Part shown: in pieces, positions 5,867-40,625 of the stretch
Position numbering within the stretch: position 1 is the stretch's first letter
Layout of the letters: every line of letters starts with the position of its first letter
Source: Mizuhopecten yessoensis
Taxonomy: Eukaryota
DNA: 64,000 nt
Reading direction: 5' to 3'
NCBI RefSeq assembly: GCF_002113885.1
Contig: NW_018408535.1
Span: 46,691-110,690, forward strand
Made by a program: the position numbers and the translations under genes
Notes under the pieces: generated by a model
Databases searched by the model: none
The model's input: the letters and a program-made list of their open reading frames with translations, nothing else
What the model was told of the DNA's origin: nothing

Positions 5867-6587
5867 AGCAGGCGACATTTATCACGGAAGTCATGACAAA
5901 AGGAGCGAGCTCTTGACTATCTAATCAAACGTATGTTATTGCTGGAGTATATTAATGTAACGTCTTGTATCCCATTCTGAAAGAAAGCTCTACGTTAGGA
6001 TGTAGATGTATGTTATTTATTGAAAACCATTCTCTGCAAAAGCAACTTACCTTAGCTGCGTTGTCCTTATAAAGGTGAAGTCAACTGTAGAGTCAAAAAC
6101 TGAAATCTAACACTGCTAAACCGTGTATTGGTATTAAATAGAAAGTAGATGTACCGCGCAGTCGTAGACACGCATCATACCTAGACTACTACACCCGAAC
6201 CTCAACTACTCTTAAATTGCTGTACGATTATGACCCTTTGGTAGTGTACTGATCGTAAATATTTGTTATCTACAGTCGCAAACAAATTCGTTTTTTTTTT
6301 AAATCAAATTTAAGATTTGTTATGCACCAGTACATATGAACCTAATTAGTTAAATAAGATAAATAATTTTAATAAAAATATCCCCTCCCCCGATCTACCA
6401 GGCACACTTTTCTCGCACCTAAGACAGTGATATCCCACGTCATACCCCATGCTAAATTTTTCTATCTCGTCCGAACTGTCTTGCACCTTTACATGACATT
6501 TCGCGGAATTTTACGCGGAAGCATTCAAATGTAGCTTAATTAGTGAAGAGGTCATTATCATTTGAGGCCCCAGACGGGAAACTTAAA

Positions 6588-6967
6588 NNNNNNNNNNNNN
6601 NNNNNNNNNNNNNNNNNNNNNNNNNNNNNNNNNNNNNNNNNNNNNNNNNNNNNNNNNNNNNNNNNNNNNNNNNNNNNNNNNNNNNNNNNNNNNNNNNNNN
6701 NNNNNNNNNNNNNNNNNNNNNNNNNNNNNNNNNNNNNNNNNNNNNNNNNNNNNNNNNNNNNNNNNNNNNNNNNNNNNNNNNNNNNNNNNNNNNNNNNNNN
6801 NNNNNNNNNNNNNNNNNNNNNNNNNNNNNNNNNNNNNNNNNNNNNNNNNNNNNNNNNNNNNNNNNNNNNNNNNNNNNNNNNNNNNNNNNNNNNNNNNNNN
6901 NNNNNNNNNNNNNNNNNNNNNNNNNNNNNNNNNNNNNNNNNNNNNNNNNNNNNNNNNNNNNNNNNNN
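6588..6967. other. Assembly gap (380 N)
   Basis: Run of N. Confidence 1.
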
Positions 6968-7412
6968 CCCGAACTACCAGGCACACTTATCCCCCTCCCC
7001 CGATCTACCAGGCACACTTATCCCCCCTCTCCCGATCTTCCAGGTACATTAATCCCCTCCCCCGATCTACCTGGCACACCGGCTTATCCCCCTCTCCCGA
7101 CCTACCAGGCACACTTATCCCCCTCTCCCGATCTACCAGGCACACTTACCCACCTCTCCCGATCTGCCAGGCACACTTATCCCCACTCCCACGATCTACC
7201 AGGCACTCTTATCCCCCCTCCCCCGATCTACCAGGCACACTTATCCCCATCTCCCAATATACCAGCCCCCTCTCCCAATATACCAGGTACACCGGCTTAT
7301 CCCCCTCGCCCGATCTACCAGGCACACTTATCCCCCTCTCCCGATCTACCAGACACGCTTATCCCCCTCTCCCGATCTACCAGGCACACTTATCCCCCCC
7401 TGCCCCGATCTA
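6968..7412. repeat. ~31-bp C-rich minisatellite (TTATCCCCCTCCCCCGATCTACCAGGCACAC); one further unit at 6380-6408
   Basis: Visible periodicity abutting the gap. Confidence 0.92.
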
Positions 7413-10785: not shown

Positions 10786-11065
10786 TTACATTTCGGTGTT
10801 TGTGACGTTTTAAATACGATGTTAGAATTACTTGCTTGTTTAAGTAAGGCATCAATAAATATCAAGAAAGGTCAAGAAGCTGAAGGATTATTTTAAAGGC
10901 GACTTTTAATGTTAATGATCATATCGAAAGTAGTTATTCTGCGGTATGAAATGTTCGTGTGCAACATTAAACTGTATCAGCGGACTGGTAACGTTTGTAC
11001 CCTTTTGATCATTCCGGGTAAATAACTGCCCGGGTTTGTAAGGCTGTAGAAACTCTTTTTGTCAA

Positions 11066-12552
11066 TTATCGTTTTTCAATTGCACTTCGGAGGATCCCAT
11101 TTTTTGGTGGGTTCTTCCTCTTTGATTTCTTAAGAACTGGAGAGCCTGATCTACCTACGTCCGACTTGGGTCTATTAGCAGGCTCGTCCTTTTCATTACT
11201 GCCGTCGGCATTTTTATCACTTCTGGTGTAGTGAGGAAGAGTTCCGGTATTTTTATCACTTCTGGTGTAGTGAGGAAGAGTTCCGGTATTTTTATCGAAC
11301 GCGTATCGACTCTGGATAGGCTTTCTTGTTTTTGCAGCCTTTTTTGCCGGATGTCTGTTTTCCTTCCTATATTGGTCTGCTGGGGTTTTGTTTGATGTCA
11401 CTGATGCGTCAGTGTTGATAGTATCATTTTGACCGACGACTCGTGGGGTCACATCTTCGTTCGTGTTTTGTTCGACTAAATGATGATCGTCATCTGATAC
11501 AGTATTTTGTTTTTGTCGGTCAATATCTCGTGCTACGGATTTCCTTGGTTCCTCTTCAATAATGTCTTTCTGTATTGATAGTTCCGATTCTTTCGATTGT
11601 TCTGTGCGATTTGTCTTTACATCTTCGTTGTTATCCTCAGACGAGACATCATTATGAGCAGGAGTTGATTTTGAAATTGATTCTTTTATAGTTTTCCTAG
11701 ACTGAGAGCCTTGTTGCTTTTCCACATATTTAGTTATTGGTGTGGTTTCATTTCCATGGAAAAACGGCCGTGCTTCTACAGACTCAGACCCTTGTTGCTT
11801 TTCCACATATTTAGTTTTTGGTGTGATTTCAGTTCCATAGAAAGGCCGTGCTTCTACAGAAGTATGATTTTGTCCATATGCTGCTCTCTCCTGTCTTATC
11901 GGTTCGTCTTTGCATTTATCGCAAATGTTGATGTCTCCTATTAAACAATCACATCCTTTCTCTGTTTTGTTCTTTGGAAACTCATGTTGACATTTACAAC
12001 AGAACAGAGAGTACGGGCATGGTCCATGTAATCCGAGGTCAGTTCCGAATCTGCCTTCAGGCGTAATCTGTCCGCAGTATAGAGGAGAGGTCCGATGTCT
12101 ATATTGGTTGGTGATACCCAGTAATGGTGTCATACAAGTTGATCTGGTCACTGTTTCTGGACGATGAACTGTAGAAGGGTGAACTTTGCCACTGTGAAAA
12201 GACACCGTGGGTGTAGATCTATCAACGAATGGGCCTTTCGACTGCACTTTAGCGCATTCACCACACATAGACATAACCGGTGTCGGACTTGCTGTACCTG
12301 CTTGTGACATGTGCTTATGTTTTTCCACTGCTTTGGTCTGAGCCTCGTTATCAAGTACAATGTGCTTGACTCTATCCTCATTCATTACTATCTTATTGTT
12401 ACGACTTTTCTCACATAAAAGCATTACCAGGAGCAATATCGCTGCTATAAGTGCTAACACCGCCGCGAGAGCAGCAAAGGCAAAGGCAAAATGAAGACAG
12501 CCATTCTCAGCGTTGATTCCGAACAAGATGACACCGGCAAGTATCAGGATAA
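11066..12552 (-). CDS. Gene A exon 3: claudin/PMP22-like tetraspan protein (end of TM3, TM4, long Cys/His-containing cytoplasmic tail)
   Basis: Acceptor ttccAG at 12554-12553, phase 1. In frame with the 486-aa ORF; stop at 11066. Hydrophobic HFAFAFAALAAVLALIAAILLLVMLLC. Confidence 0.9.
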
Positions 12553-12789
12553 CTGGAATTTAATCAATTAAACACAGTTGTCATCTATATATTATTTTCA
12601 AGCCATACTCGCATGAAAAAAAAACTGCCTATGACACATAAAAGAAGAAGAATTCAAAAGGGATGGTTTTACATATTTTGTATGAACCATTCGTTTCTCT
12701 GATGTAAATAAGCTATATAAATATTACAATTCGAACAAATTTGGTACAGTAAAGAGCATTATATTAAGAACATATATCTGCCTTTCTAA

Positions 12790-13011
12790 AAACCAGGTAT
12801 CAGTTTTAATTTATGAAAACGGCAATTATTAACAACATCACAAAGTATTTACTTACCGCATATGCACAGTTATGCGATCAAAATTATGCGAAAAACCAGG
12901 AAACCAGGTATCGGTTTTAATTTTTGAAAACGGCAATTATTAACAACATCACAAAGTATTTACTTACCGCATATGCACAGTAATGCGATCAAAATTATGC
13001 GAAAAACCAGG
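12790..13011. repeat. 111-bp tandem duplication spanning gene A exon-2 3' end and donor
   Basis: 12790-12900 matches 12901-13011, bounded by AAACCAGG microhomology; second GTAAGT donor after 12857. Confidence 0.9.
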
Positions 13012-13111
13012 TTTCGTGAAAAGCATGACAGATGAACAGTCAGAAATATTGCCACAAGGAACAGCAGAAGCATCGATGTAGTCTCCAATACCTTGACGAC
13101 GTTTATCCAAA
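12968..13111 (-). CDS. Gene A exon 2 (TM2 and start of TM3), 144 nt
   Basis: ttacAG acceptor, G|GTAAGT donor. VWINVVKVLETTSMLLLFLVAIF... aligns with exon 2 of genes B and C (same 144-nt length). Confidence 0.9.
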
Positions 13112-14506
13112 CTGTAAGTATAATAATAAAACAATTACTGCCAGTACAATACAACATCTGTAATTTGGTAATCATGAACCATAAAAACAGAGTGATTCTG
13201 GGATGTCGAGTTAGCTAATTTTCAAATTTATAGGAACATGAGTTTTACCGCCTTACTTATGAAATTAAAAAATTAACAAATGAGGAAAGATAAATTTGAT
13301 AATCAACCATCACTGATAAAGGAGACTTTTTCTCCCAAAATGTCTATATTATATCTAGCAAAACCTATTTACCTCTTGGGAATATACTGCTCCCGGCTCC
13401 GATCGGTGGAACAAATACCATGACTTTGACACCACAATAGAATAGTACGTGGCAAAACAGTTTTACTTGAAATCATTAGTAGACAATTGACCAATGGAAC
13501 AACGTCCAGTGTGCTACCCATTTATTGGTAACAAAAAAGGTTTACCAACTCCTAGCAGGTTTATCCAATGAGTTGGGAGTAAGAATATTCTGTTAGTTGA
13601 GGGGGGAAATAACACAAGTTGATATGGGAACAAGAGATAAAAGGGTACCTTGATGAGCCACGAAATAAATAATATCAATATTATTATTATTAGAGCCTGT
13701 TCAAAACTACGATATAAGTTGTCCTTCAACACCGGAAGTCGAACACATGCCCACCAGCCGACCGAGCGTCAAACACTGCAATATTCGATTGGTGCTAGAA
13801 AGTCTGATTTACAGAGTGGTCTTGATAACCAAAGTCTTAATTTACAAAACAATGCACTAAAACGTTCTGAAAGTTATTTCATTTGATATGTCATGTCATT
13901 TTGTAGTTCTGGTATATTTTAGTAAATTTGTAGTAAATATATACAGTCAGGACATTCCTACCTACAGGTATGTAGTTGTATTTTTATGTAAACAAATTGA
14001 CTCACATACTTAAGTGTCGTCTTTACAATGAAAGATATTGTTTAAATGAAGAATTAAAATGTTCGATGAAATTAAGAAACGAAATATTTCTAAAAGTCGC
14101 CAAACAAGGACACGATAAAGCAGCATCAACACACAAGAACAAAATATACTATAGCCCCAACATACATTGACAAACTGGAACCCAGCGTGAACAACAGGGA
14201 TACACATACATTATTAGCGTCAAACTTAGGGACAAAAGTTACCACAACATCATCACAATATGACAAATTATATCACAGTGGCATCAAACCGGGAGATTTA
14301 ATACCATACCGTCCACAAAAGGGAAAATACATATTCAACATTAAACACAAATCCTACCACGTTAATACATTTTGATGAAATATACCACATATTCAACATA
14401 AAGCACAATCCTACCACGTCAATACATTTTGATAAAATATAGCACAACGCATCACACGGGTTTAACTATACCACAGAGTCAACATACAAAACAAAGTATA
14501 CAACGT

Positions 14507-15231: not shown

Positions 15232-15457
15232 CTGTTGATTCAGATGGATGCCAGCAACTTGAATAACCATTTTCTAAATCACAGATAGTCCACAGTCCTT
15301 GCACGTAGCTGTGGGACAATTGTGTCGTATTCACGGTGATGTACTCATATACATCAATCCATTGCCAAAATGGCAGTGACACCGCAATCACCTGTATCAG
15401 CAGTGCAGTAATGGTCACAGTTAGTGCTGCCCACTCACAGAGTCTCTGCTGTTCCAT
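15232..15457 (-). CDS. Gene A exon 1: claudin/PMP22/EMP superfamily protein; join(15457-15232,13111-12968,12552-11066) = 618 aa
   Basis: ATG, TM1, then the claudin ECL1 signature W...GLW-x2-C-x8-C (PFW...QGLWTICDLENGYSSCW); CAG|GTAATA donor, phase 1. Confidence 0.9.
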
Positions 15458-20521: not shown

Positions 20522-20856
20522 TTACTCTAGTAGTTCCTTTGCCTGGCCGTTGTCCGCTTGTGACTGTCTGGATTCTGCCCTTTGTTGCTGACTGTCGTTG
20601 ACAGGTTCAACTTTCGACGATCTTCTAGATGTGCTGGAGTGCATTTCGGTGGCATTATACGCTCTATCATATGTCTCTGCATGTTCCTGATCTACCCAGA
20701 AGGTTTTCTCCCGTCGGCAACTACACATCACAATGAGCAGTATCGCGGGGACTGCAGTTACGATAGCGGCAATCACAGCAAAGGCATATCCGACGTGTAG
20801 ATGATCTGCGTCCGCATTGTGTCCATATACAGACACTCCAATCAGGAGGAAGAACA
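20522..20856 (-). CDS. Gene B exon 3 (end of TM3, TM4, short tail)
   Basis: cttccAG acceptor, phase 1. VFFLLIGVSVYG...HVGYAFAVIAAIVTAVPAILLIVMCSC; GYAF precedes TM4 as is typical of the claudin/PMP22 family. Confidence 0.9.
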
Positions 20857-21518
20857 CTGGAAGTAAACGAATGCTATCAAAACGAACTGGACGATGTGTA
20901 TCGTTCATGGTAGCGAAATAAAGAACATCGAAAATTATAGAGTAAAGATAAATCAAATAGGTCTGGTCCCTCCTGGTAGAAATTAACTATTGAATCTTCA
21001 TATTTTTATTGCATTTGATATCATGAATTTAGCACAAAAATCTTTTGAGAGTAAATGTGTTATTAATAAGAGCGTTTTGTAAGTCTTATTTTGTCCGTTA
21101 TAATGTATATTACAAGAATACATATATAAAAAGGTGGTATGTTGAGTATCCTAGCAAATTTGAACAGATGCGTTTCTCTTTAGTATTTGCATTTGGGTTT
21201 TTTCTGAATGAATACAGTAAACGTACATATTTTAGCGGAAGACCTATTTTATTGCTTTTCGAGTTGTAACTACAGCACTAAACTAATTTTGCGCGTATTG
21301 AAGTTCCTATATATTTTTGTTTTGTTGCAGGTTGCATGTTCTTTTGTGGGTGTGCTGATATAATAAAATCCGCCAATGCGCTGAAATTTAAATGCGCTTA
21401 AATATGTCCGTGTCCAGTATCATCATTTGTAAAACCGATTACCGTGTCTGTTGAAGTATAAACGTACTATAGAGAGGTATTCAAAAGGTAACATGTCCGC
21501 GTGATGTGTTTGACTCAC

Positions 21519-21662
21519 CAATCACGAAGAGTGTGACAATGAAGATCACGTGAACCACGACTTTCCATTGTAACAGTAGAAGGTAGAGGGTAAGCAGAAC
21601 AGCCACAATGAACAGCAACACTAATCCAAACATCTCAAACGTCCTCACCACATTCAGCCAGG
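21519..21662 (-). CDS. Gene B exon 2, 144 nt
   Basis: tttccAG acceptor, G|GTGAGT donor; AWLNVVRTFEMFGLVLLF... Confidence 0.92.
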
Positions 21663-22096
21663 CTGGAAAAGGTATACATATATACAACGATTAACCATAA
21701 ATTAACGCCAATAAATTCGGACATGCTTAGAAATGATATGCACAACAAATATCGTATCGTAACAGCTACCATTTTATTGTTAAAGTGTCGAACCGTTTAC
21801 GATCACTAGCTATCTAGCCCTTGGTCGCAGGTTTGAGGCCTACATAAGGCTTTCCTAGGACGTTAACCACAAAGAAGCCTTACCATTAAACCTTGTATCA
21901 CCATATGCTGAAGCAAAGATATATATAATGTTAACCTACTATGATCATAACGTTCATCCCGACCACATCCAGCCATGGAAGATAAACAACGATTACCTTT
22001 TCATTATTCCAACAATATCCAGCCAGGCTTAACAAAAGATATATAACGATTAATTTGTATTTGTGTTTACTACACCAAGTCATGCTGGATGATTTC

Positions 22097-22250: not shown

Positions 22251-22648
22251 CCATATGTGTTAACAACGTGGCTACCCCCCACCCCCCACCCCCAAACCCG
22301 ACAACCGCCCACCACCGACCCCTATTGCTGGATGAACAGCGATCAGCAGTGTATCATCCGTCGCGCATTGTAATAGCATGGTCTTTTTCAATCAATACTT
22401 TGTTGAATATATCTAACTTGTAACTTTATACCTTGGGTACAGTTTGTATATCGTAACACTAAATAGAGATTTTACCACACCATCTGGTCTTAACGGATTG
22501 CTGAACTATTTATGGAGAGCACCGCATAAGTGTGAGTGAAGGTTAAGATCAGTGGTAATTATCACTGAAGACCTCTTTAGTACCAACATATAGATATACC
22601 CCAACTTACAGGTGTATTCATATATCAATACTTAGTTCCATGCCTTAC

Positions 22649-22856
22649 CTGGGATAGTGTTATGCATTCGACATATTGTGCCGCCATCGCCCATCATTGC
22701 ACACATGGAAAACAGTCCATGTAGAATGCCTCCAGGGACAGAGGGCATGTTGTCGTACCATTGCCAATGAGGTAGACACACTGCCAAGAACTGGAGCAGC
22801 AACGCGATGACGGACAGTACAATGGCTGCCCAAACAAACACACTATGTTTCTGCAT
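22649..22856 (-). CDS. Gene B exon 1: claudin/PMP22-like protein; join(22856-22649,21662-21519,20856-20522) = 228 aa
   Basis: MQKHSVFVWAAIVLSVIALLLQFLAVCLPHW...HGLFSMCAMMGDGGTIC (W..GLF..C..C); CAG|GTAAGG donor, phase 1. Confidence 0.9.
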
Positions 22857-24659
22857 TTTTTTTATCCTTTTCAGAAATGTTGTGAAGGAATGAACTAATA
22901 AATATCCGCTTAGATGTGTCCCAACCTTCTGGTGAGATGGCGTGCGTGCCTGGCGCGTTCTTTCTTGGTGTGGGTCACAAGTACCCACTTCAATGTGACA
23001 CAACCGCCTGGCGTAACAATGTTCCCGTCACGTTCTGTTGTTGTTGTTGGGTTACAATGTTGTTAGTGAGAAGAGTTGTCTCCAAAATGCTAACGTCATT
23101 ATCAATACATTATTCATTGATGTTTTGACGCTTTCGTTCTGCATGATGTGACAAAATTTCCGATAACTATATATGATTCTAATTATACTTCAGGACATGC
23201 TAGCTAAAAACTAAGAAAGTGCCGTTGTATTTGTTGAATTTTGTATTGGCGTAATTTTACCGTCTTAAATAATGTAATTTGATAACATTTGCAATCAATA
23301 TAATGAGTTACACTACAGACATATAATTTACCGTTGCATGTACCAGGCTAAACAAACGGAATATTAAATAGCAATCATTTAGAGTCTTTTCCTAATATTT
23401 TCTGATGTTTTCTTAATTCGCCATATTTCATCAAAGATGAACATGATACACACCAACACAAAGATGAGTCAACCTTTACCATATTTTTTTTATAAATAAA
23501 GGATGCCAAAAAGGAAAAACAAACATGTAACATACATGAATTTATGGAGTTGATTCAGACACCTGATAAGGAGATAATTATTTCATATTTATACATTCTA
23601 AGTAGTTAAGCAATAAAGAAGCTCGCACTAGATGCGTCAGCATTGCTAATTCCTATAAATTTATTAGGAAATATTTTGAAACTAAGCAAATTCGAAATTT
23701 GAGTAAAAACCAATCCGTCACGGCTTCTACACAGTACGTGTCAGCAGCAGTGTTTGTTGTGTTACATGTTTATAGAGATAGTGAAGTGGGACAGAACTTA
23801 GTTACGCGCTTTGTTATTACCGGTGCCTTGCTACCGTGTTAGAAACAAAACAAACCACGTTACAAAATAACCTTGAAACGTCAATTATTCAAACTCTGTA
23901 TTCTAGTTTATCGATTAACATAGACAACAATAACATGCAAGCTACGAATGATGTTATCGTACTTTACCAGATACAATTTTTTATAACTTTGAATATGAAA
24001 TTTGGGTACATTACAAACCATGCGAGGCAAAATAAATTCATGGAAGCGGCGGCTTTTGCTTTTAAAGTGTCTCAAACATCACGCAAGAAAGTTAGAGGGA
24101 GATATTTTCTCTATCGCGATAAGATCCCCCAGGGTACATCTTGGAACGTTGAAAGTCATGATACTAACGATCTCTTTATGACCAGCCACGAATGTATGAG
24201 GTTTGCAATTCGCGTATTTGACCACAAATAAAGCAAAAATGTAACCTCGAGGAGCTATCAGCCTAAACAGTGAAATAGTGAATGTAATTTATGGGTTCAT
24301 TCATAGAACAGTTTAGATGTAAGCTTCCTTAAAATAGAAATGTTGAAGTGAGGTTCCCTGAATAAGCAGTTGGGATGTAAGTTTTCCTGCTCGGTTCTTT
24401 GAAAGAACCAGTTGGTTTGTAAAGATAATTGTGTTATATCTGCAGTAGTTAACAGGTACCATCATGTGCGCTGATGAGGGAACTTAATACAAACAATATT
24501 TATATATACACACAAGTGCTCTTGCATTCAAGACACATCCCCGATACACAAGGAAATACTGGGAGATATTTACAACGGTATCCAAGGTTTGAAACAGTTT
24601 TCAACGATATTAAAAGCTGGATATCTCTATGATATTTCGTAAATCTAATTAGACATAAT

Positions 24660-25846: not shown

Positions 25847-27063
25847 TTAGTGTTTAGTGCGGAGCTTGGGCGGTCTCATGATTTAGTGTTTGGTGAGGAA
25901 CTTGGGCGGTCTCATGATTTAGTGTTTAGTGAGGAACTTGGGCGGTCTCATGATTTAGCGTTTAGTGAGGAACTTGGGCGGTCTCATGATTTGTGTTTAG
26001 TGAGGAACTTGGGCGGTCTCATGATTTGGTGTTTGGTGAAGAACTTGGGCGGTCTCATGATTTAGTGTTTGGTGAAGAACTTGGGCGGTCTCATGATTTG
26101 TGTTTAGTGCGGAACTTGGGCGGTCTCATGATTTAGTGGTTAGTGCGGAACTTGGGCGGTCTAATGATTTAGTGTTTAGTGAGGAACTTGTGCGGTCTCA
26201 TGATTTGTGTTTAGTGCGGAACTTGGGCGTTCTCATGTTTAAGTGTTTAGTGCGGAACTTGGGCGGTCTAATGATTTAGTGTTTAGTGAGGAACTTAGGC
26301 GGTCTCATGATTTAGTGTTTAGTTAGGAACTCGGGCGGTCTCATGATTTGTGTTTAGTGAGGAACTTGCGCGGTCATGATTTGTGTTTAGTGCGGAACTT
26401 GGGCGGTCTCATGTTTAAGTGTTTAGTGCGGAACTTGGGCGGTCTCATGATTTAGTGTTTAGTGAGGAACTTGCGCGGTCTCATGATTTAGTGTTTAGTG
26501 AGGAACTCGGGCGGTCTCATGATTTACTGTTTAGTGGGGAACTTGGGCGGTCTCATGATTTAATGTTTAGTGAGGAACTTGGGCGGTCTCATGATTTAAT
26601 GTTTAGTGAGGAACTTGGCCGGTCTCATGATTTGTGTTTAGTGAGGAACTTGTGCGGTCTCATGATTTATTGTTGAGAGAGGAACTTGTGCGGTCTCATG
26701 ATTTAGTGTTTAGTGAGGAATTTGGGCGGTCTCATGATTTGTGTTTAGTTAGGAAATTGGGCGGTCTCATGATTTAGTGTTTAGTTAGGAACTTGGGCGG
26801 TCTCATGATTTAGTGGTTAGTGCGGAACTTGGGCGGTCTCATTATCTAGTGTTTAGTGAGGCACTTGGGCGGTCTCATGATTATGTGTTTAGTGAGGAAC
26901 TTGGGCGGTCTCATTATCTAGTGTTTAGTGAGGCACGTGGGCGGTCTCATGATTTAGTGTTTAGTGAGGAACTTGGGCGGTCTCATTATCTAGTGTTTAG
27001 TGAGGCACTTGGGCGGTCTCATTATCTAGTGTTTAGTTAGGCACGTGGGCGGTCTCATGATTT
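25847..27063. repeat. 36-bp minisatellite (TTTAGTGTTTAGTGAGGAACTTGGGCGGTCTCATGA), ~34 copies
   Basis: Visible periodicity; the ELGRSHDLVFS ORFs are repeat read-through. Confidence 0.96.
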
Positions 27064-31124: not shown

Positions 31125-33022
31125 CTAAAACTGGCCTTTCCATTTAGGAGGTACCCATTTATGTTTTTTCTTCTTGGTCTTTTGAGTACCAGACTCATCG
31201 CCTGCATTTTGAATGCCGTTATGATTGGCGTCTGATTCCGACTTAGGTCTCTTTGAATCGTTTGTCAGTGTATTGCCAACATGATTGTCATACTGACTGA
31301 GTATCCGTGGTTTCTTTCGTGGATTATTGCTTCCATGTGGCTTGGTATCGCCATTTGTGTTCGGTTTTACAGGAGGCTTCCCACCACTAAGAGTATCTTT
31401 GTCGCTAGGGCTCGACACTGGCGTCCTGACTTGTTCCTCACCTACATATGGATGTTCAGCTCTATTTGATGGTGACTCTACTGGTGTTTCGTTTCTATTA
31501 ATGCCCGATTTTCCTGATGGTTTTGCATCATTACGAATATTGCTCTTGTAAGTCTTCCTTGGCTTTGCTTGATGCGCATTTGGGGTTTCATATTCATCTT
31601 GATGATTTTGAAGTTTTCTCTCGTCGTAAATCCCCTCATCATCAATGTTATTGTAATTGTCATCTGCAGCATTTCCAGACGTTCTGTCATCATTGTTGTC
31701 ATAGGTTGAATCATTGTCGTAATCTGGAGGTTGAAACTCAGATGAGTCATCACTACTGGACGGATGTGTTCCAAACATAACGTGTTTCCTTTGTTGTGCC
31801 TTGTCAATACTGTTCTTAGGTTTGTCTCTGTCACCAACTTGATCGTCGAGAGATGTTTTTGATTGGACTGGTGCATTAGAACGGTAGACCCGTGCATTAG
31901 GTTTAATGGCACTTGCTGGTTGTCCATGGTTTTGTTTGCGGGGAACAACATTGTTTATTTCGCGTTTTGCTAGACATTTGTCACACAACTTTATGTCACC
32001 AAGTTGGCAATCACATAAGTAATTCCCGTTTCGTCCGTTCAGTTGTTCATTTCGGTTGTGTTCCGTTGACTTGCTTTGTATGCTATGTTTACAACGACAA
32101 CAAAAGACAGAGAAGGGACAAGGTGCGTGTGGACCATGATGTACACTGAATGCGCTGGCTGGAACATTTCGACCACAAGGTATTATGGTAGATCTGTGGT
32201 GATTCCATTTCCGGTTCCGTTCTCCATTTTCATGCTGCGGTGTCATACAAGTTGATCTATTAGTACATATTGGTTGATATTTGTTATAGTTTATTCCGGT
32301 CGTAACACTGTGTGCGTTTTCAGACTTTTTACTCTGCATTTGATCTACTTTGGGCTGTTGTATTGGTTCCTGATGTAACCAGGAGGCCGATGTCGCTACA
32401 TCTCTGTGCTGTAGTGGGGTGATCGATGTTGATCTGTCAATACCAGTGAGGCGTTTGTACGAATCCCGTCCACGCGTAACACATACTGTTTCATGTAATT
32501 CCCTTCCCAACGTTGTTTGACATTGTCTATCCTTGTTTACATGACAACATTTACAACATGTAAACAAACAGCAAAACCTACAGCATTTACAATACTTGCA
32601 TTCTTTTTCATCAAGGAGTGGTTTGACCGGGGTTGACGTTTGCCGCGAGATTTGAGTTGTTGTTCTGATGTATTCCGTATGTTTCTCGTTGGCTGGTTCT
32701 ACTCTAGACGAGCGTCTCAACGAAAACTGTGAACTGTTTCTTGACAATTTCGTATTTTCCCTAGTCCATGCCGGTGTCGGTTCTCGTTCAATCACAACAG
32801 AGGAAGATGTCGTTGGATCTCGCCCCATCACTGATATGTCGTTATGCTTATCACTATGGCTGCGTGTCTGGCAACAATTGTAACATGAATACACGACAAG
32901 AAGTAAAACGGCAGCAATCAGTACGAAGACGGCAGCGACCAATGCCAGACCGAAAGACACATACAGTTGTTCCATTGGAGAATTCAGTCCATAAATGATG
33001 ATACCAACGATGATGAGTGTCG
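31125..33022 (-). CDS. Gene C exon 3 (end of TM3, TM4, ~580-aa cytoplasmic tail with Cys-rich modules)
   Basis: ttttttgtAG acceptor, phase 1, in frame with the 637-aa ORF; homologous to gene A exon 3. Confidence 0.92.
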
Positions 33023-33376
33023 CTACAAAAAAAACCACAACAATTTATCTTATGTTGGTGAAATTAAAACGAATTTAATTAAGAAATGTGAATTTTGATA
33101 ACTACGTGGCTTTTAGATATACCATCATAACACACATGACGGAATATTTTTATCAATTTTGGAACAATTGTTTCCTTTTCTTTCAGTAGATAACATTAAA
33201 CATATGTTACTGTAAAATAGCAGATGTAAATATAATTTATATTGTTTCGATAGGAAACTGAATGCCTTGTTTGTCACCAAACTTGTTTTCTTTATATGCG
33301 AAACTCTTATAGTCATGAGTAGTACTACACCAGATTGGCTAACCATGAGTAGTGTATTCATCATAAGCATTACTTT

Positions 33377-34806
33377 GGTAAATACATCAGCTGTGAGTAA
33401 TAGTAGGACAGATTTCACTACTTACCAGCCATAAGTAGTGATATGGTAAATACATCAGCTGTGAGTAATAGTAGAACAGATTTCACTACTTACCAGCCAT
33501 AAGTAGTGATATGGTAAATACATCAGCTGTGAGTAATAGTAGAACAGATTTCACTACTTACCAGCCATAAGTAGTGATATGGTAAATACATCAGCTGTGA
33601 GTAATAGTAGAACAGATTTCACTACTTACCGGCCACACAAGTAGTGATATGGTAAATACATCAGCTGTGGGGAATAGTAGGACAGATTTCACTACTTACC
33701 GGCCATAAGTAGTGATATGGTAAATGCATCAGCTGTGTGTGATAGTAGGATATATTTCACTACTTACCAGCCATAAGTAGTGATACGGTAAATACATCAG
33801 CTGTGTGTGATAGTAGGACATATTTCACTACTTACCGGCCATAAGTAGTGATATGGTAAATACATCAGCTGTGTTCAATAGTAGAACAGATTTCAGTACT
33901 TATCGGCCATAGGAAGTGATATCGTAAATATATCAACTGTGTGTGATAGTAGAACAGATTTCACTACTTACCGGCCATAAGTAGTGATACGGTACATACA
34001 TCAGCTGTGAGTAATAGTAGGACGGATTTCACTACTTACCGGCCATAAGTAGTGATATGGTAAATACATCAGCTGTGTGTAATAGTAGGACAGATTTCAC
34101 TGCTTACCGGCCATAAGTAGTGATATGGTACATACATCAGCTGTGAGTAATAGTAGGACAGATTTCACTACTTACCGGCCATAAGTAGTGATATGGTAAA
34201 TACATCAGCTGTGAGTAATAGTAGGACAGATTTCACTACTTACCGGCCATAAGTAGTGATATGGTAAATACATCAGCTGTGAGTAATAGTAGGACAGATT
34301 TCACTACTTACCGGCCATAAGTAGTGATATGGTAAATACATCAGCTGTGAGTAATAGTAGGACAGATTTCACTACTTACCGGCCATAAGTAGTGATATGG
34401 TAAATACATCAGCTGTGAGTAATAGTAGGACAGATTTCACTACTTACCGGCCATAAGTAGTGATATGGTAAATACATCAGCTGTGAGTAATAGTAGGACA
34501 GATTTCACTACTTACCGGCCATAAGTAGTGATATGGTAAATACATCAGCTGTGAGTAATAGTAGGACAGATTTCACTACTTACCGGCCATAAGTAGTGAT
34601 ATGGTAAATACATCAGCTGTGAGTAATAGTAGGACAGATTTCACTACTTACCGGCCATAAGTAGTGATATGGTAAATACATCAGCTGTGTGTAATAGTAG
34701 AACAGATTTCACTACTTACCGGCCATAAGTAGTGATATGGTAAATACATCAGCTGTGTGTAATAGTTGAACAGATTTCACTACTTACCGGCCATAAGTAG
34801 TGATAT
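33377..34806. repeat. 68-bp tandem array (~21 units) built from the gene C exon-2 end plus splice donor
   Basis: Minus-strand unit tcctactattactcacAG CTGATGTATTTACCATATCACTACTTATGGCCG GTAAGTagtgaaatctg; its last 19 exon-like nt equal the exon-2 3' end. Confidence 0.95.
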
Positions 34807-34931
34807 AACTATGACGGCGTGGAGTATTTCCTTCCAGGAGACGTCCATGAGATACACAACCATTCCCACTAGTGCCAGGAATAAAAGGAACAAGGCCATC
34901 ATTTCCAGTGTCCGTACGATATCCAGCCAGA
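34788..34931 (-). CDS. Gene C exon 2, 144 nt
   Basis: gtttcAG acceptor, G|GTAAGT donor; VWLDIVRTLEMMALFLLFLALVG... Confidence 0.92.
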
Positions 34932-36708: not shown

Positions 36709-36904
36709 CTTCTGGTGTGGAGTGACTCCAACATTCTGACCAGCCGCTGTATGTAAGACATGTCGACCACAGTCCCTGTGTGACGTCACCTGTGGGGACA
36801 GTGGTTATCTGCCAGAATGGTAGTGCTACAGCTAGGATGTGGACAGAGATGGCAGCCAACGTCACACTTAGGGCGGCTATCACACAACATCTTCTGGGCT
36901 TCAT
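36709..36904 (-). CDS. Gene C exon 1: claudin/PMP22-like protein; join(36904-36709,34931-34788,33022-31125) = 745 aa (alternative donor at 36697 adds 4 aa)
   Basis: MKPRRCCVIAALSVTLAAISVHILAVALPFW...QGLWSTCLTYSGWSECW; two phase-1 GT donors 12 nt apart. Confidence 0.88.
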
Positions 36905-37349: not shown

Positions 37350-40300
37350 CAATACCATGGTGACCAATGTCCAAATACCTTGGTGATCATTGTATGGTGA
37401 ACAGTCTCTGAATACTATTGTGAACGTGGTGATCATTTTACGAAATTACCTTGATGGTCAGTGTTCGAATACTATAGTGACAATTGTCCGATAGTAATGG
37501 TTATTATTGTCCGAATACCTTGGTGATCATTGTCCAAATACCTTGGTGATCATTGCCCGAATACCTTGGTGATCATTGTCCAAATACCTTGGTGATCATT
37601 GTTCAAATACCTTGGTGATCATTGTCCCAATATCTTGGTGATCAGTGATCTTATACCTTGGTGATCATCGGCCGAATACAATGGTGATTATTTCCGAAAA
37701 CCGTGGTGATCATTGTCCAAATACCTTGGTGATCATTGTTCCAATATCTTGGTGATCAGTGACCTTATACCTTGGTGATCATTGTCCGAATACCTTTGTG
37801 ATCATTTCTTGGTGATCATTGTTCGAATACCTTGGGGATCATTGTCCGAATACCTTGGTGATCATTTCCGAATACCTTGGTGATCATTGTCCAAATACAT
37901 TGGTGATCATTTCCGAATACCTTGGTGATCATTGCCCCAATACCTTGTTGATCATTGTCCGAATACCTTGGTGATAATTGCCCCAATAACCTTGGTGATC
38001 ATTATCCAAATACCTTGGTGGTCATTTCCGAATACTTTGGTGATCACTGTCCAAATACCTTGGTGATCATTGTCCCAATATCTTGGTGATCAGTGACCTT
38101 ATACCTTCGTGATAATCGGCGAATACAATGGTGATTATTTCCGAAAACCTTGGTGCTCATTGTCCAAATCCCTTGGTGATCATTGTTCCAATATCTTGGT
38201 GATCAGTGACCTTATACCTTCGTGATAATCGGCGAATACAATGGTGATTATTTCCGAAAACCTTGGTGATCATTGTCCAAATACCTTGGTGATCATTGTT
38301 CCAATATCTTGGTGATCAGTGACCTTATACCTTGGTGATCATCGGCGAATACAATGGTGATTGTTTCCGAATACCTTGGTAATCATTGCCCCAATACCTT
38401 GGTTATCATTGTCCGAATACCTTGGTGATAATTGTCCGAATACCTTGGTGATCATTGTCCAAATACATTGGTGATCATTGCCCCAATACCTTGGTGATCA
38501 TTTCCGAATACCTTAGTGATCATTTCCGAATACCTTGGTGATCATTGCCCCAATACCTTGGTAATCATTGTCAAAATACCTTGGTGGTCATTTCCGAATA
38601 CTTTGGTGATCATTGTCCGAATACCTTGATAACCATTGTCCGAATACCTTGGTGATCATTCCCCCAATACCTTGGTGATCATTGTCCGAATACCTTGGTG
38701 ATCATTTCCGAATACCTTGGTAATCATTGCCCCAATATCTTGGTGATCATTGTCCGAATACATTGGTGATCATTGTCCGAATACCTTGGTGATGAGTGTC
38801 CAAATAAATTGGTGATCACTGTCCGAATATCTTGGTTATCATTGTCCGAATACCTTGGTGATCATTGTCCGAATATCTTGGTTATCATAGTCCAACGACC
38901 TTTGTGATCATTTCCGAATACCTTGGTAATCATTGTCCGAATACCTTGGTGATCGTTGTCCGAATACCTTGGTGATGAGTGTCCAAATACCTTGATGATG
39001 AGTGTCCGAATACCTTGGTGATGAGTGTCCGAATACCTTGGTGATGAGTGTCCAAATACCTTGGTGATGAGTGTCCAAATAAATTGGTGATCACTGTCCG
39101 AATATCTTGGTTATCATTGTCCGAATACCTTGGTGATCATTGTCCTAATACCTTGGTGATCATTGTCCGAATACCTTGGTGATCATTTCCGAATACCTTG
39201 GTAATCATTGTCCGAATACCTTGGTGATCATTGTCCGAATACCTTGGTGATCATTGCCCGAATACCTTGGTGATCGTTTCCGAATACCTTGGTAATCATT
39301 GCCCCAATATCTTGGTGATCATTGTCCGAATACCTTGGTGGTCACTTCCGAATACATTGGTGATCATTGTCCGAATACCTTGGTGATGAGTGTCCAAATA
39401 CCTTGGTGATCATTGTCCGAATACCTTGGGGATCATTGTCCGAATACCTTGGTGATGGGTGTCCAAATACCTTGGTGATGAGTGTCCAAATACCTTGGTG
39501 ATCACTGTCCGAATATCTTGGTTATCATTATCCAACTACCTTGGTGATCATTGTCCGAATACCTTGGTAAACTCCGAATACCTTGGTGATGAGTGTCCCA
39601 ATACCTTGGTGATGAGTGTCCGAATACCTTGGTGATGAGTGTCCAAATACCTTGGTGATCACTGTCCGAATATCTTGGTTATCATTGTCCAACTACCTTG
39701 GTGATCATTGTCCGAATACCTTGGTGATCATTGTTCGAATACCTTGGTGATCATTGTCAAAATACTTTGGTAATCATTTCCGAATACCTTGGTAATCATT
39801 GTCCGAATACCTTGATGATCGTTGTCCGAATACCTTGGTGATGAGTGTCCAAATACCGTGGTGATGAGTGTCCAAATACCATGAAGATCATTGTCCGAAT
39901 ATTTTGGTTATCATAGTCCAAAGACCTTGGTGATCATTTCCGAATACCTTGGTAATCATTGTCCGAATACTTTGGTGATCATTGTCCAAATATCTTGGTG
40001 ATCATTGTCCGAATACCTTGGTGATCATTGTCCGAATACCTTGGTGATCATTGTCCGAATACCTTGGTAAACATTGCCCCAATACCTTGGTAATCATTTT
40101 CCGAATACCTTGGTGATCATTGTCAAAATACTTTGGTAATCATTTCCGAATACCTTGGTAATAATTGTCCGAATACCTTGGTGATCGTTGTCCAAATACC
40201 TTGGTGATGAGTGTCCGAATACCTTGGTGATGAGTGTCCGAATACCTTGGTGATGAGTGTCCAAATACATTGGTGATCATTGTCCGAATATCTTGGTTAT

Positions 40301-40625
40301 CATAGTCCAAAGACCTTGGTGATCATTTCCGAATACCTTGGTAATCATTGTCCGAATATCTTGGTGATCATTGTCCGAATACCTTGGTGATCATTGTCCG
40401 AATACCTTGTTGATCATTGTCCGAATACCTTGGTAATCATTGCCCCAATACCTTGATAATCATTGTCCGAATACCTTGGTGATCATTGTCAAAATACTTT
40501 GGTAATCATTGTCCGAATACCTTGGTGATCAGTGTTCTTAATAACGTGATGATCAGTGTCCTAATACCTTATTGATCATATACCTTGGTGATCAGTGGGC
40601 AAATGGGCGAATACCATGTTGATTA
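37350..40625. repeat. 23-bp minisatellite (ATTGTCCGAATACCTTGGTGATC), ~140 copies
   Basis: Visible periodicity with degenerate edges. Confidence 0.97.

What the first reader, a model, noticed from the sequence alone, without database searches (positions are those of the whole stretch)
31973..32258. Unnamed Cys/His module conserved between the tails of genes C and A (putative Zn-binding domain)
Seen: within otherwise low-complexity tails both proteins keep RSTCMTP...CG...G-x-H-x-PCP[YF]S[LV]FCC[KR]C-x-H...CDC-x-[IL]GDI-x2-CDKC. The gene A copy is at 11910-12145, and both share the identical DNA stretch GTGTCATACAAGTTGATCT. About ten conserved Cys plus His in a cytosolic region suggest two metal sites (inference). 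I do not recognise the domain.
Basis: partly seen in the sequence, partly recalled or inferred. Interest (0 to 1): 0.72.

Follow-up and report, generated by a model that had tools for sequence, protein, structure and literature searches.

The report
Scallop-only Cys/His module in claudin-like tails
Two neighbouring claudin-like membrane-protein genes of a scallop genome carry the same small block of ten cysteines and three histidines in their otherwise disordered cytoplasmic tails; it is real, under purifying selection and matches no known domain, so it is probably a lineage-restricted zinc-binding module, but metal binding and function are untested.

Summary
The last exons of gene C (31125-33022, minus) and gene A (11066-12552, minus) share one significant stretch (BLASTP 38/102 identical, E 3e-19). 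It is a 95-aa (31974-32258) and a 78-aa (11912-12145) module. Each holds exactly 10 Cys, all aligned, plus 3 aligned His, and no Cys occurs in the ~281 aa after it.

Both genes are three-exon claudin-like 4-TM genes, so the tail should be cytosolic. The Pecten maximus orthologue of gene C keeps all 13 Cys/His. In Ylistrum balloti the N-part is intact, but the C-terminal knuckle is interrupted by a stop and frameshifts in that assembly. dN/dS is 0.24 in the module (0.03 in the knuckle) against 0.77 and 0.42 in the flanking tail.

No relative turned up in Pfam, PDB sequences, the ESM Atlas, 1.84 billion protein representatives (one true hit, a scallop), JGI metagenomes, or elsewhere in this genome.

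AlphaFold2 gave no confident model (pLDDT 34-36), so no fold comparison was possible. RNA support for gene A is thin. Zinc binding stays an inference, and 13 conserved ligands allow three sites, not only two.

Verdict: a real, orphan, scallop-restricted putative metal-binding module of moderate interest.

The parts
31974..32258 (-). Gene C Cys/His module, 95 aa, 10 Cys + 8 His (3 of them conserved)
32085..32258 (-). Gene C module, N-part: RSTCMTP ... H[RK] ... CG ... G-x-H-x-PCP-x-S-x-[FY]-CC-x-C-x-H (6 Cys, 3 His)
   Evidence: alignments; dN/dS 0.29 vs P. maximus
32016..32084 (-). Gene C module, variable linker: 23 aa here, 10 aa in gene A, 23 in P. maximus, longer in Y. balloti
31974..32015 (-). 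Gene C module, C-terminal 14-residue knuckle C-D-C-x-[LI]-G-D-x2-[LI]-C-D-K-C
   Evidence: dN/dS 0.03 over 15 codons
11912..12145 (-). Gene A Cys/His module, 78 aa, 10 Cys + 3 His. N-part 11984-12145, linker 11954-11983, knuckle 11912-11953
31125..33022 (-). Gene C last exon: TM3, TM4 and a ~580-aa tail. Acceptor AG at 33023-33024, phase 1
   Evidence: collinear with P0003/P0001
34788..34931 (-). Gene C exon 2 (144 nt, TM2)
   Evidence: matches the orthologue proteins
36709..36904 (-). Gene C exon 1: start codon, TM1, and the extracellular loop with GLW-x2-C ... C-W claudin-type motif
11066..12552 (-). Gene A last exon: TM3, TM4 and tail. Acceptor AG at 12553-12554, phase 1
12968..13111 (-). 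Gene A exon 2 (144 nt, same length and phases as gene C exon 2)
15232..15457 (-). Gene A exon 1 (start codon, TM1, GLW-x2-C ... C-W loop)
32544..32600 (-). Separate poly-Cys stretch in the gene C tail (10 Cys in 19 aa, CKCC-x-FCC-type). Kept in P. maximus and Y. balloti, absent from gene A; a likelier palmitoylation site than the module
   Evidence: dN/dS 0.28
20522..20956 (-). Gene B last exon: the third tandem claudin-like paralogue, with a short tail and no module (contrast case)

Best explanation
The module is a small, lineage-restricted (so far Pectinidae-only) metal-stabilised domain, most likely binding Zn2+. It lies in the cytosolic C-terminal tail of claudin-like four-pass membrane proteins. 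It has two units joined by a linker of free length. The N-terminal unit is a Cys/His cluster (RSTCMTP ... H ... CG ... H-x2-C-x5-CC-x-C-x-H). The C-terminal unit is a 14-residue C-x-C-x7-C-x2-C knuckle. Inferred: the thiolates and imidazoles chelate two or three Zn ions, which gives the only folded element in an otherwise disordered, charged tail. That element would serve as a docking surface for a cytoplasmic partner (scaffold, cytoskeleton or trafficking factor) of the membrane protein. Shown: conservation, selection, position and absence of known relatives. Inferred: cytosolic location (from claudin topology), metal binding and partner docking.
For: The only significant similarity between the two tails is this block (E 3e-19). 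All 10 Cys and 3 His align in both paralogues and in the P. maximus orthologue. Gene A has only three His in the module and all three are the conserved ones. Each module has exactly 10 Cys, and the ~281 aa after it have none. Indels fall only between the blocks. dN/dS against P. maximus is 0.24 for the module and 0.03 for the knuckle, versus 0.77 and 0.42 in the flanking tail and 0.29 in the TM region. DNA identity between A and C is 52.5%, so the conservation is at protein level and not from recent gene conversion. The host proteins are claudin-like: P0003 scores 24.7 bits on PMP22_Claudin (E 2.4e-5) and hits claudin-15 4p79 at E 2.6e-4. They have four hydrophobic segments and a basic N-terminus, which puts the tail in the reducing cytosol, where CxC/CxxC/His clusters usually bind Zn (established knowledge).
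Against: There is no direct evidence of metal binding. AlphaFold2 gave pLDDT 35.8 and 33.7 with no stable secondary structure, so no fold could be compared. No sequence link to any zinc-finger family was found. Atlas feature hits stayed below the 0.9 level; the nearest named ones were Zn-ribbon-like but at chance level. In Y. balloti the knuckle is interrupted by a stop and frameshifts in the assembly, so it may be dispensable there. No A-type copy was seen outside this genome. Gene A has only thin RNA-library contig cover (depth 2-5, last exon only), no splice joints, and no reads in two raw RNA runs.
Confidence: 0.55

Rival explanations
1. The cysteines are S-acylation (palmitoylation) sites that pin part of the tail back onto the membrane, not metal ligands.
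For: Claudins are palmitoylated on cytosolic Cys (established knowledge; PMC5668376 was listed but not read). The same tail has juxtamembrane Cys and a poly-Cys stretch. CC and C-x-C doublets next to Phe/Leu ([FY]-CC-x-C) resemble acylated motifs.
Against: The module starts about 90 (gene A) or about 205 (gene C) residues after TM4. The conserved His, Gly, Pro and Asp, and the fixed C-x-C-x7-C-x2-C spacing, are not needed for acylation. The poly-Cys stretch at 32544-32600 is the better acylation candidate and is missing from gene A, whereas the module is kept.
Confidence: 0.12
2. It binds another cofactor or metal: an Fe-S cluster or redox switch (CDGSH-like 3Cys-1His logic), or Cd/Cu thiolate clusters in the manner of metallothionein.
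For: C-x-C and C-x2-C motifs and a C-D-x-C ending recall CDGSH and metallothionein patterns (from memory, a lead only). Thirteen ligands exceed the eight that two simple Zn sites would need.
Against: No Pfam hit to zf-CDGSH, metallothionein or any Fe-S family even at E 10. Cys content is 10-13% with aromatic residues present, unlike metallothioneins. The knuckle lacks the terminal His of CDGSH (direct reading).
Confidence: 0.12
3. There is no autonomous fold. The block is a set of short linear motifs in a disordered tail (for example a phospho-site S-T-C-M-T-P and partner-binding peptides), and the Cys are conserved for partner contacts or disulfide or redox regulation.
For: AlphaFold2 predicts disorder throughout. 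The blocks are short and separated by variable linkers.
Against: Thirteen invariant Cys/His over about 80 residues across paralogues that are 52% identical in DNA is hard to explain by linear motifs. AF2 had only 4 sequences and cannot model metal-dependent folding well.
Confidence: 0.13

Closest known systems
Small cytosolic zinc knuckles and zinc ribbons (e.g. CCHC knuckle, CSL-type C-x-C...C-x2-C fingers)
   Same: Compact runs of Cys/His with C-x-C and C-x2-C pairs, about 14 residues per site, Gly/Pro/Asp next to the ligands, and a cytosolic location.
   Different: No sequence match to any Pfam zinc-finger model or PDB chain. The ligand order H-x2-C-x5-CC-x-C-x-H plus C-x-C-x7-C-x2-C is not one I can assign to a named family. 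No predicted structure is available to compare.
Claudin / PMP22 / EMP tetraspan family (the host protein)
   Same: Four TM segments, a GLW-x2-C...C motif in the first extracellular loop, a weak PMP22_Claudin hit and a claudin-15 hit, and a cytosolic tail after TM4.
   Different: Scores lie just under Pfam's gathering cut-off (24.7 vs 26.7 bits). The tails are about 450-580 aa instead of the 20-60 aa I recall for vertebrate claudins, and they carry this Cys/His module, which I do not know from other claudins (from memory, not tested; literature search blank).
CDGSH iron-sulfur domain (mitoNEET type)
   Same: A C-x-C ... C-D-x-x ending on a membrane-anchored cytosolic segment (resemblance recalled from memory).
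   Different: The spacing and the fourth ligand differ (Cys instead of His, no Gly). There is no Pfam hit.

Membership tests
Any Pfam-A zinc-finger or Cys-rich domain | hmmscan score at or above the family's gathering cut-off | tested here: not met
   Module of gene C, gene A and P. maximus: no family at E <= 1; best was DUF2729 at E 2.1
Any solved structure (PDB) by sequence | profile or sequence match at E <= 10 | tested here: not met
   Profiles A1 and A2 gave 0 matches
Any known fold by structure | a confident model with a Foldseek or VIA match | tested here: inconclusive
   AF2 pLDDT 35.8 and 33.7. The models were too poor to search, so fold search was not run
Claudin/PMP22 superfamily (host protein) | PF00822 at or above 26.7 bits | tested here: not met
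   P0003 scores 24.7 bits, E 2.4e-5; P0001 scores 10.5 bits. This is close to threshold but below it
Claudin/PMP22 superfamily (host protein) | Four TM helices and a W-GLW-C-C type motif in loop 1 | tested here: met
   GLWSTC...SECW (gene C) and GLWTIC...SSCW (gene A) read directly. Four hydrophobic segments are present. Claudin-15 4p79 matches at E 2.6e-4
Metallothionein | About 25-30% Cys, and few or no aromatic residues or His (from memory) | tested here: not met
   10 Cys in 78-95 aa (10-13%), with Phe/Tyr/His present
CDGSH Fe-S domain | C-x-C-x2-[ST]-x3-P-x-C-D-G-[SAT]-H signature (from memory) | tested here: not met
   The knuckle reads C-D-C-x-[LI]-G-D-x2-[LI]-C-D-K-C. No Pfam hit
Zinc-binding domain in general | Stoichiometric Zn bound by the Cys/His | not testable with these tools
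   Needs ICP-MS, Co(II) titration or NMR on recombinant protein

The most novel reading that the evidence does not exclude
The module is a previously undescribed metal-thiolate fold with three interleaved sites (13 invariant ligands), unique to scallops. It would make a claudin-like membrane protein respond to cytosolic Zn/Cd load, for example by metal-dependent folding of the tail that switches partner binding or junction assembly.
Probability: 0.1. Interest if true: 0.6.

Novelty: new variant of a known kind. Interest (0 to 1): 0.35.

Why it matters
If it binds metal, this would be an orphan zinc-module family and a new domain architecture: a claudin-like tetraspan joined to a cytosolic Cys/His domain, seen so far only in Pectinidae. 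It gives a handle on what the very long, disordered tails of these mollusc claudin-like proteins do, because the module is the one strongly constrained element in them. The practical impact is modest. It involves one small gene cluster in one animal family, no phenotype, and no link to a long-standing open question.

Tried and rejected
- **Pfam:** scans of both exon translations, both modules and the orthologues found nothing for the module.
- **PDB sequence searches:** 2- and 4-sequence profiles found nothing.
- **ESM Atlas feature search:** gene C gave no usable hit. Gene A gave a best score of 0.83, below the 0.9 lead level.
- **Word-index protein searches:** two searches on the modules found nothing, because the own-genome proteins appear to be withheld.
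- **JGI metagenome scan:** 115 pattern hits, none a relative.
- **AlphaFold2:** run on both modules with a 4-row alignment, pLDDT 34-36. I therefore did not run fold search, because matches to such models are meaningless.
- **Gene conversion:** I considered it as the source of the identical 19-mer and rejected it. The module DNA is 52.5% identical overall, and only 17 of 38 identical residues share a codon.
- **Conserved DNA/RNA element at the 19-mer:** rejected, because P. maximus and Y. balloti use other synonymous codons there.
- **More copies in this genome:** none beyond the two.
- **A and B orthologues in the 10-kb flanks of the P. maximus and Y. balloti loci:** none found. The Y. balloti flank holds a retrotransposon and then the contig ends.
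- **Literature:** nothing on these loci or on such a module.
- **Species identity:** the one literature search found nothing.
- the joined spliced protein was never built or searched, and exons were handled by reference only. The N run near 6560-7000 was left untouched.

Full report
**What is there**

The window (G000:C5208:46691-110690, from a 988-Mb genome of 82,659 contigs) holds three tandem genes on the minus strand. I built the exon models by reading splice sites and comparing with two annotated scallop proteins.

- Gene A: 15232-15457, 12968-13111, 11066-12552.
- Gene B: first exon within 22632-23003, second within 21481-21687, last 20522-20956.
- Gene C: 36709-36904, 34788-34931, 31125-33022.

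These rest.

**The host proteins are claudin-like**

- The first exons carry the loop motif GLW-x2-C ... C-W.
- The P. maximus orthologue scores 24.7 bits on PMP22_Claudin, just under the 26.7-bit cut-off.
- It also matches claudin-15 (4p79) at E 2.6e-4.
- With four hydrophobic segments and a basic N-terminus, the long tail after TM4 should be cytosolic. This is an inference from claudin topology.

**The observation**

- BLASTP of the two last-exon translations gives a single significant segment, 38/102 identical, E 3e-19. Nothing else in the roughly 450-580-aa tails aligns.
- The module runs from RSTCMTP to CDKC. It is 95 aa in gene C (31974-32258) and 78 aa in gene A (11912-12145).
- Each copy has exactly 10 Cys, all aligned. 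Gene A has only three His in the module, and all three align with His in gene C.
- Neither tail has a single Cys in the ~281 aa that follow the module.
- The shared 19-mer is real, with two exact hits and none expected, but it is just the RSTCMT(P) codons.
- Overall the module DNA is 52.5% identical, and only 17 of 38 identical residues share a codon. The duplication is therefore old and the conservation is at protein level.
- The other scallops use different synonymous codons at the 19-mer.

**Anatomy**

There are four conserved blocks, with indels only between them:

1. RSTCMTP.
2. H-[RK]-[ST] ... C-G.
3. F ... G-x-H-x-P-C-P-x-S-x-[FY]-C-C-x-C-x-H.
4. A 14-residue knuckle, C-D-C-x-[LI]-G-D-x2-[LI]-C-D-K-C.

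A linker of 10 aa (gene A) or 23 aa (gene C and P. maximus) separates blocks 3 and 4; it is longer in Y. balloti.

**Relatives**

- A profile of both copies was searched against 1.84 billion protein representatives. It found one true relative, P0001 (E 7e-25), and one spurious bacterial repeat protein.
- P0001 is XP_060069091.1 of Ylistrum balloti.
- A word search with P0001 added P0003, LOC117335365 of Pecten maximus.
- Both species are Pectinidae, and both proteins are orthologues of gene C across all three exons.
- P. maximus keeps all 10 Cys and 3 His.
- In Y. balloti the N-part is intact. The open frame reads VCDCQLG and then hits a stop. The remainder (NLCDKK) lies in another frame, next to an A7 run. 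The conserved C-terminus of the protein lies in a third frame. NCBI's model splices around this region. I cannot tell assembly indels from real decay.
- P. maximus also has its conserved C-terminus out of frame with the annotated stop, so frame problems in these tails are not unique to Y. balloti.
- No second, A-type module-bearing protein appeared anywhere outside this genome.
- Inside this genome there are only the two copies.
- JGI metagenomes gave nothing.

**Selection**

I made a codon alignment of the gene C last exon with its P. maximus counterpart and calculated dN/dS by the Nei-Gojobori method.

| Region | dN/dS | Codons | Other |
|---|---|---|---|
| Whole module | 0.24 | 96 | 67% aa identity |
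| Module N-part | 0.29 | 59 | |
| Knuckle | 0.03 | 15 | |
| Tail before the module | 0.77 | 93 | |
| Tail after the module | 0.42 | 137 | |
| TM3-TM4 region | 0.29 | 56 | |

The module is as constrained as the membrane domain and is the most constrained part of the tail. The codon counts are small and dS is near saturation, so the figures are rough.

**Known domains**

- Pfam gives nothing for any of the three modules scanned, even at a permissive E-value.
- PDB sequence profiles give nothing.
- Atlas features give nothing at or above the 0.9 lead level. The nearest named clusters were Zn-ribbon-like but at chance level.
- AlphaFold2 with the 4-row alignment gave pLDDT 35.8 and 33.7 with almost no secondary structure. 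I did not run fold searches on such models.
However, a four-sequence alignment and metal-free prediction of a small metal-dependent domain make it weak evidence.

**Expression**

- Runs of the same organism were found.
- In two RNA-type libraries kept as contigs, low-depth contigs (2-5x) cover parts of gene A's last exon, including part of the module (12017-12261, 12282-12455, 11000-11651).
- Exons 1 and 2 have no cover and no splice joint. Two raw-read RNA-seq runs showed no reads on gene A.
- All high depth sits on a repeat at 13527-13580.
- Expression of gene A is therefore unproven. Its intact ORF of about 495 codons in 36% GC DNA argues that it is maintained.
Its model rests on the orthologues' annotation.

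**Interpretation**

The best reading (about 0.55) is a Zn-stabilised mini-domain that forms the one folded docking element of a disordered cytosolic tail. The rivals are:

- palmitoylation sites, for which the separate poly-Cys stretch at 32544-32600 is the likelier candidate;
- another cofactor or metal, such as Fe-S or Cd/Cu thiolate;
- a set of linear motifs without a fold.

None can be excluded without biochemistry.

**Novelty and verdict**

This is an orphan Cys/His module with no detectable relatives outside scallops, on a host family where I know of no such module (from memory; literature search blank). I class it as a new variant of a known kind, small cytosolic Cys/His metal modules, rather than as categorically new. 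The finding is real and correctly described. Its interest is moderate, and function and metal binding remain to be tested.

Noticed in passing
window 31125-31200 (-); L003 14740-14826; L004 17700-17787: The extreme C-terminus of gene C (K-rich run, then HKWVPP[KQ]WK[GS][QH]F and the stop) is almost identical in three scallop genera. In both the P. maximus and Y. balloti assemblies it lies out of frame with the annotated protein, so the public models probably have wrong C-termini or the assemblies carry indels.
   Followed up: partly
window 32544-32600 (-): A poly-Cys stretch (10 Cys in 19 aa) lies in the gene C tail. It is conserved in P. maximus and Y. balloti (dN/dS 0.28) but absent from gene A, and is a likely multi-palmitoylation or second metal site.
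   Followed up: partly
gene B tail within 20522-20956 (-) and gene C tail about 32690-32730 (-): The tails of genes B and C share a short motif, RRSS-[KR]-VEP-[VA]-N-[DE]. Weaker versions occur in P. maximus and Y. balloti. It may be a phosphorylation or docking site, and gene A lacks it.
   Followed up: no
window 11066-11900 (-): The gene A tail holds two pairs of tandem peptide repeats: about 25 aa (EARPF..TP.TKYVEKQQGS) and 13 aa (DKNTGTLPHYTRS).
   Followed up: no
window 25850-27040 (+) and 37816-40310 (both strands): Long tandem minisatellite arrays give repetitive open frames (SEELGRSHDLVF units; HHQGIRTLITKVFG units). They lie between genes B and C and upstream of gene C.
   Followed up: no
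window 13527-13580: A short repeat in gene A's first intron draws very high depth in all four RNA runs, with many unlike flanks. It is probably a dispersed, transcribed repeat (SINE-like) and unrelated to gene A.
   Followed up: no
L003 15025-20154 (-): In Y. balloti a retrotransposon lies immediately downstream of the gene C orthologue. It has a 1142-aa ORF with endonuclease/RT-like sequence plus a 547-aa ORF, and it sits where gene B lies in this window.
   Followed up: no
   Followed up: no
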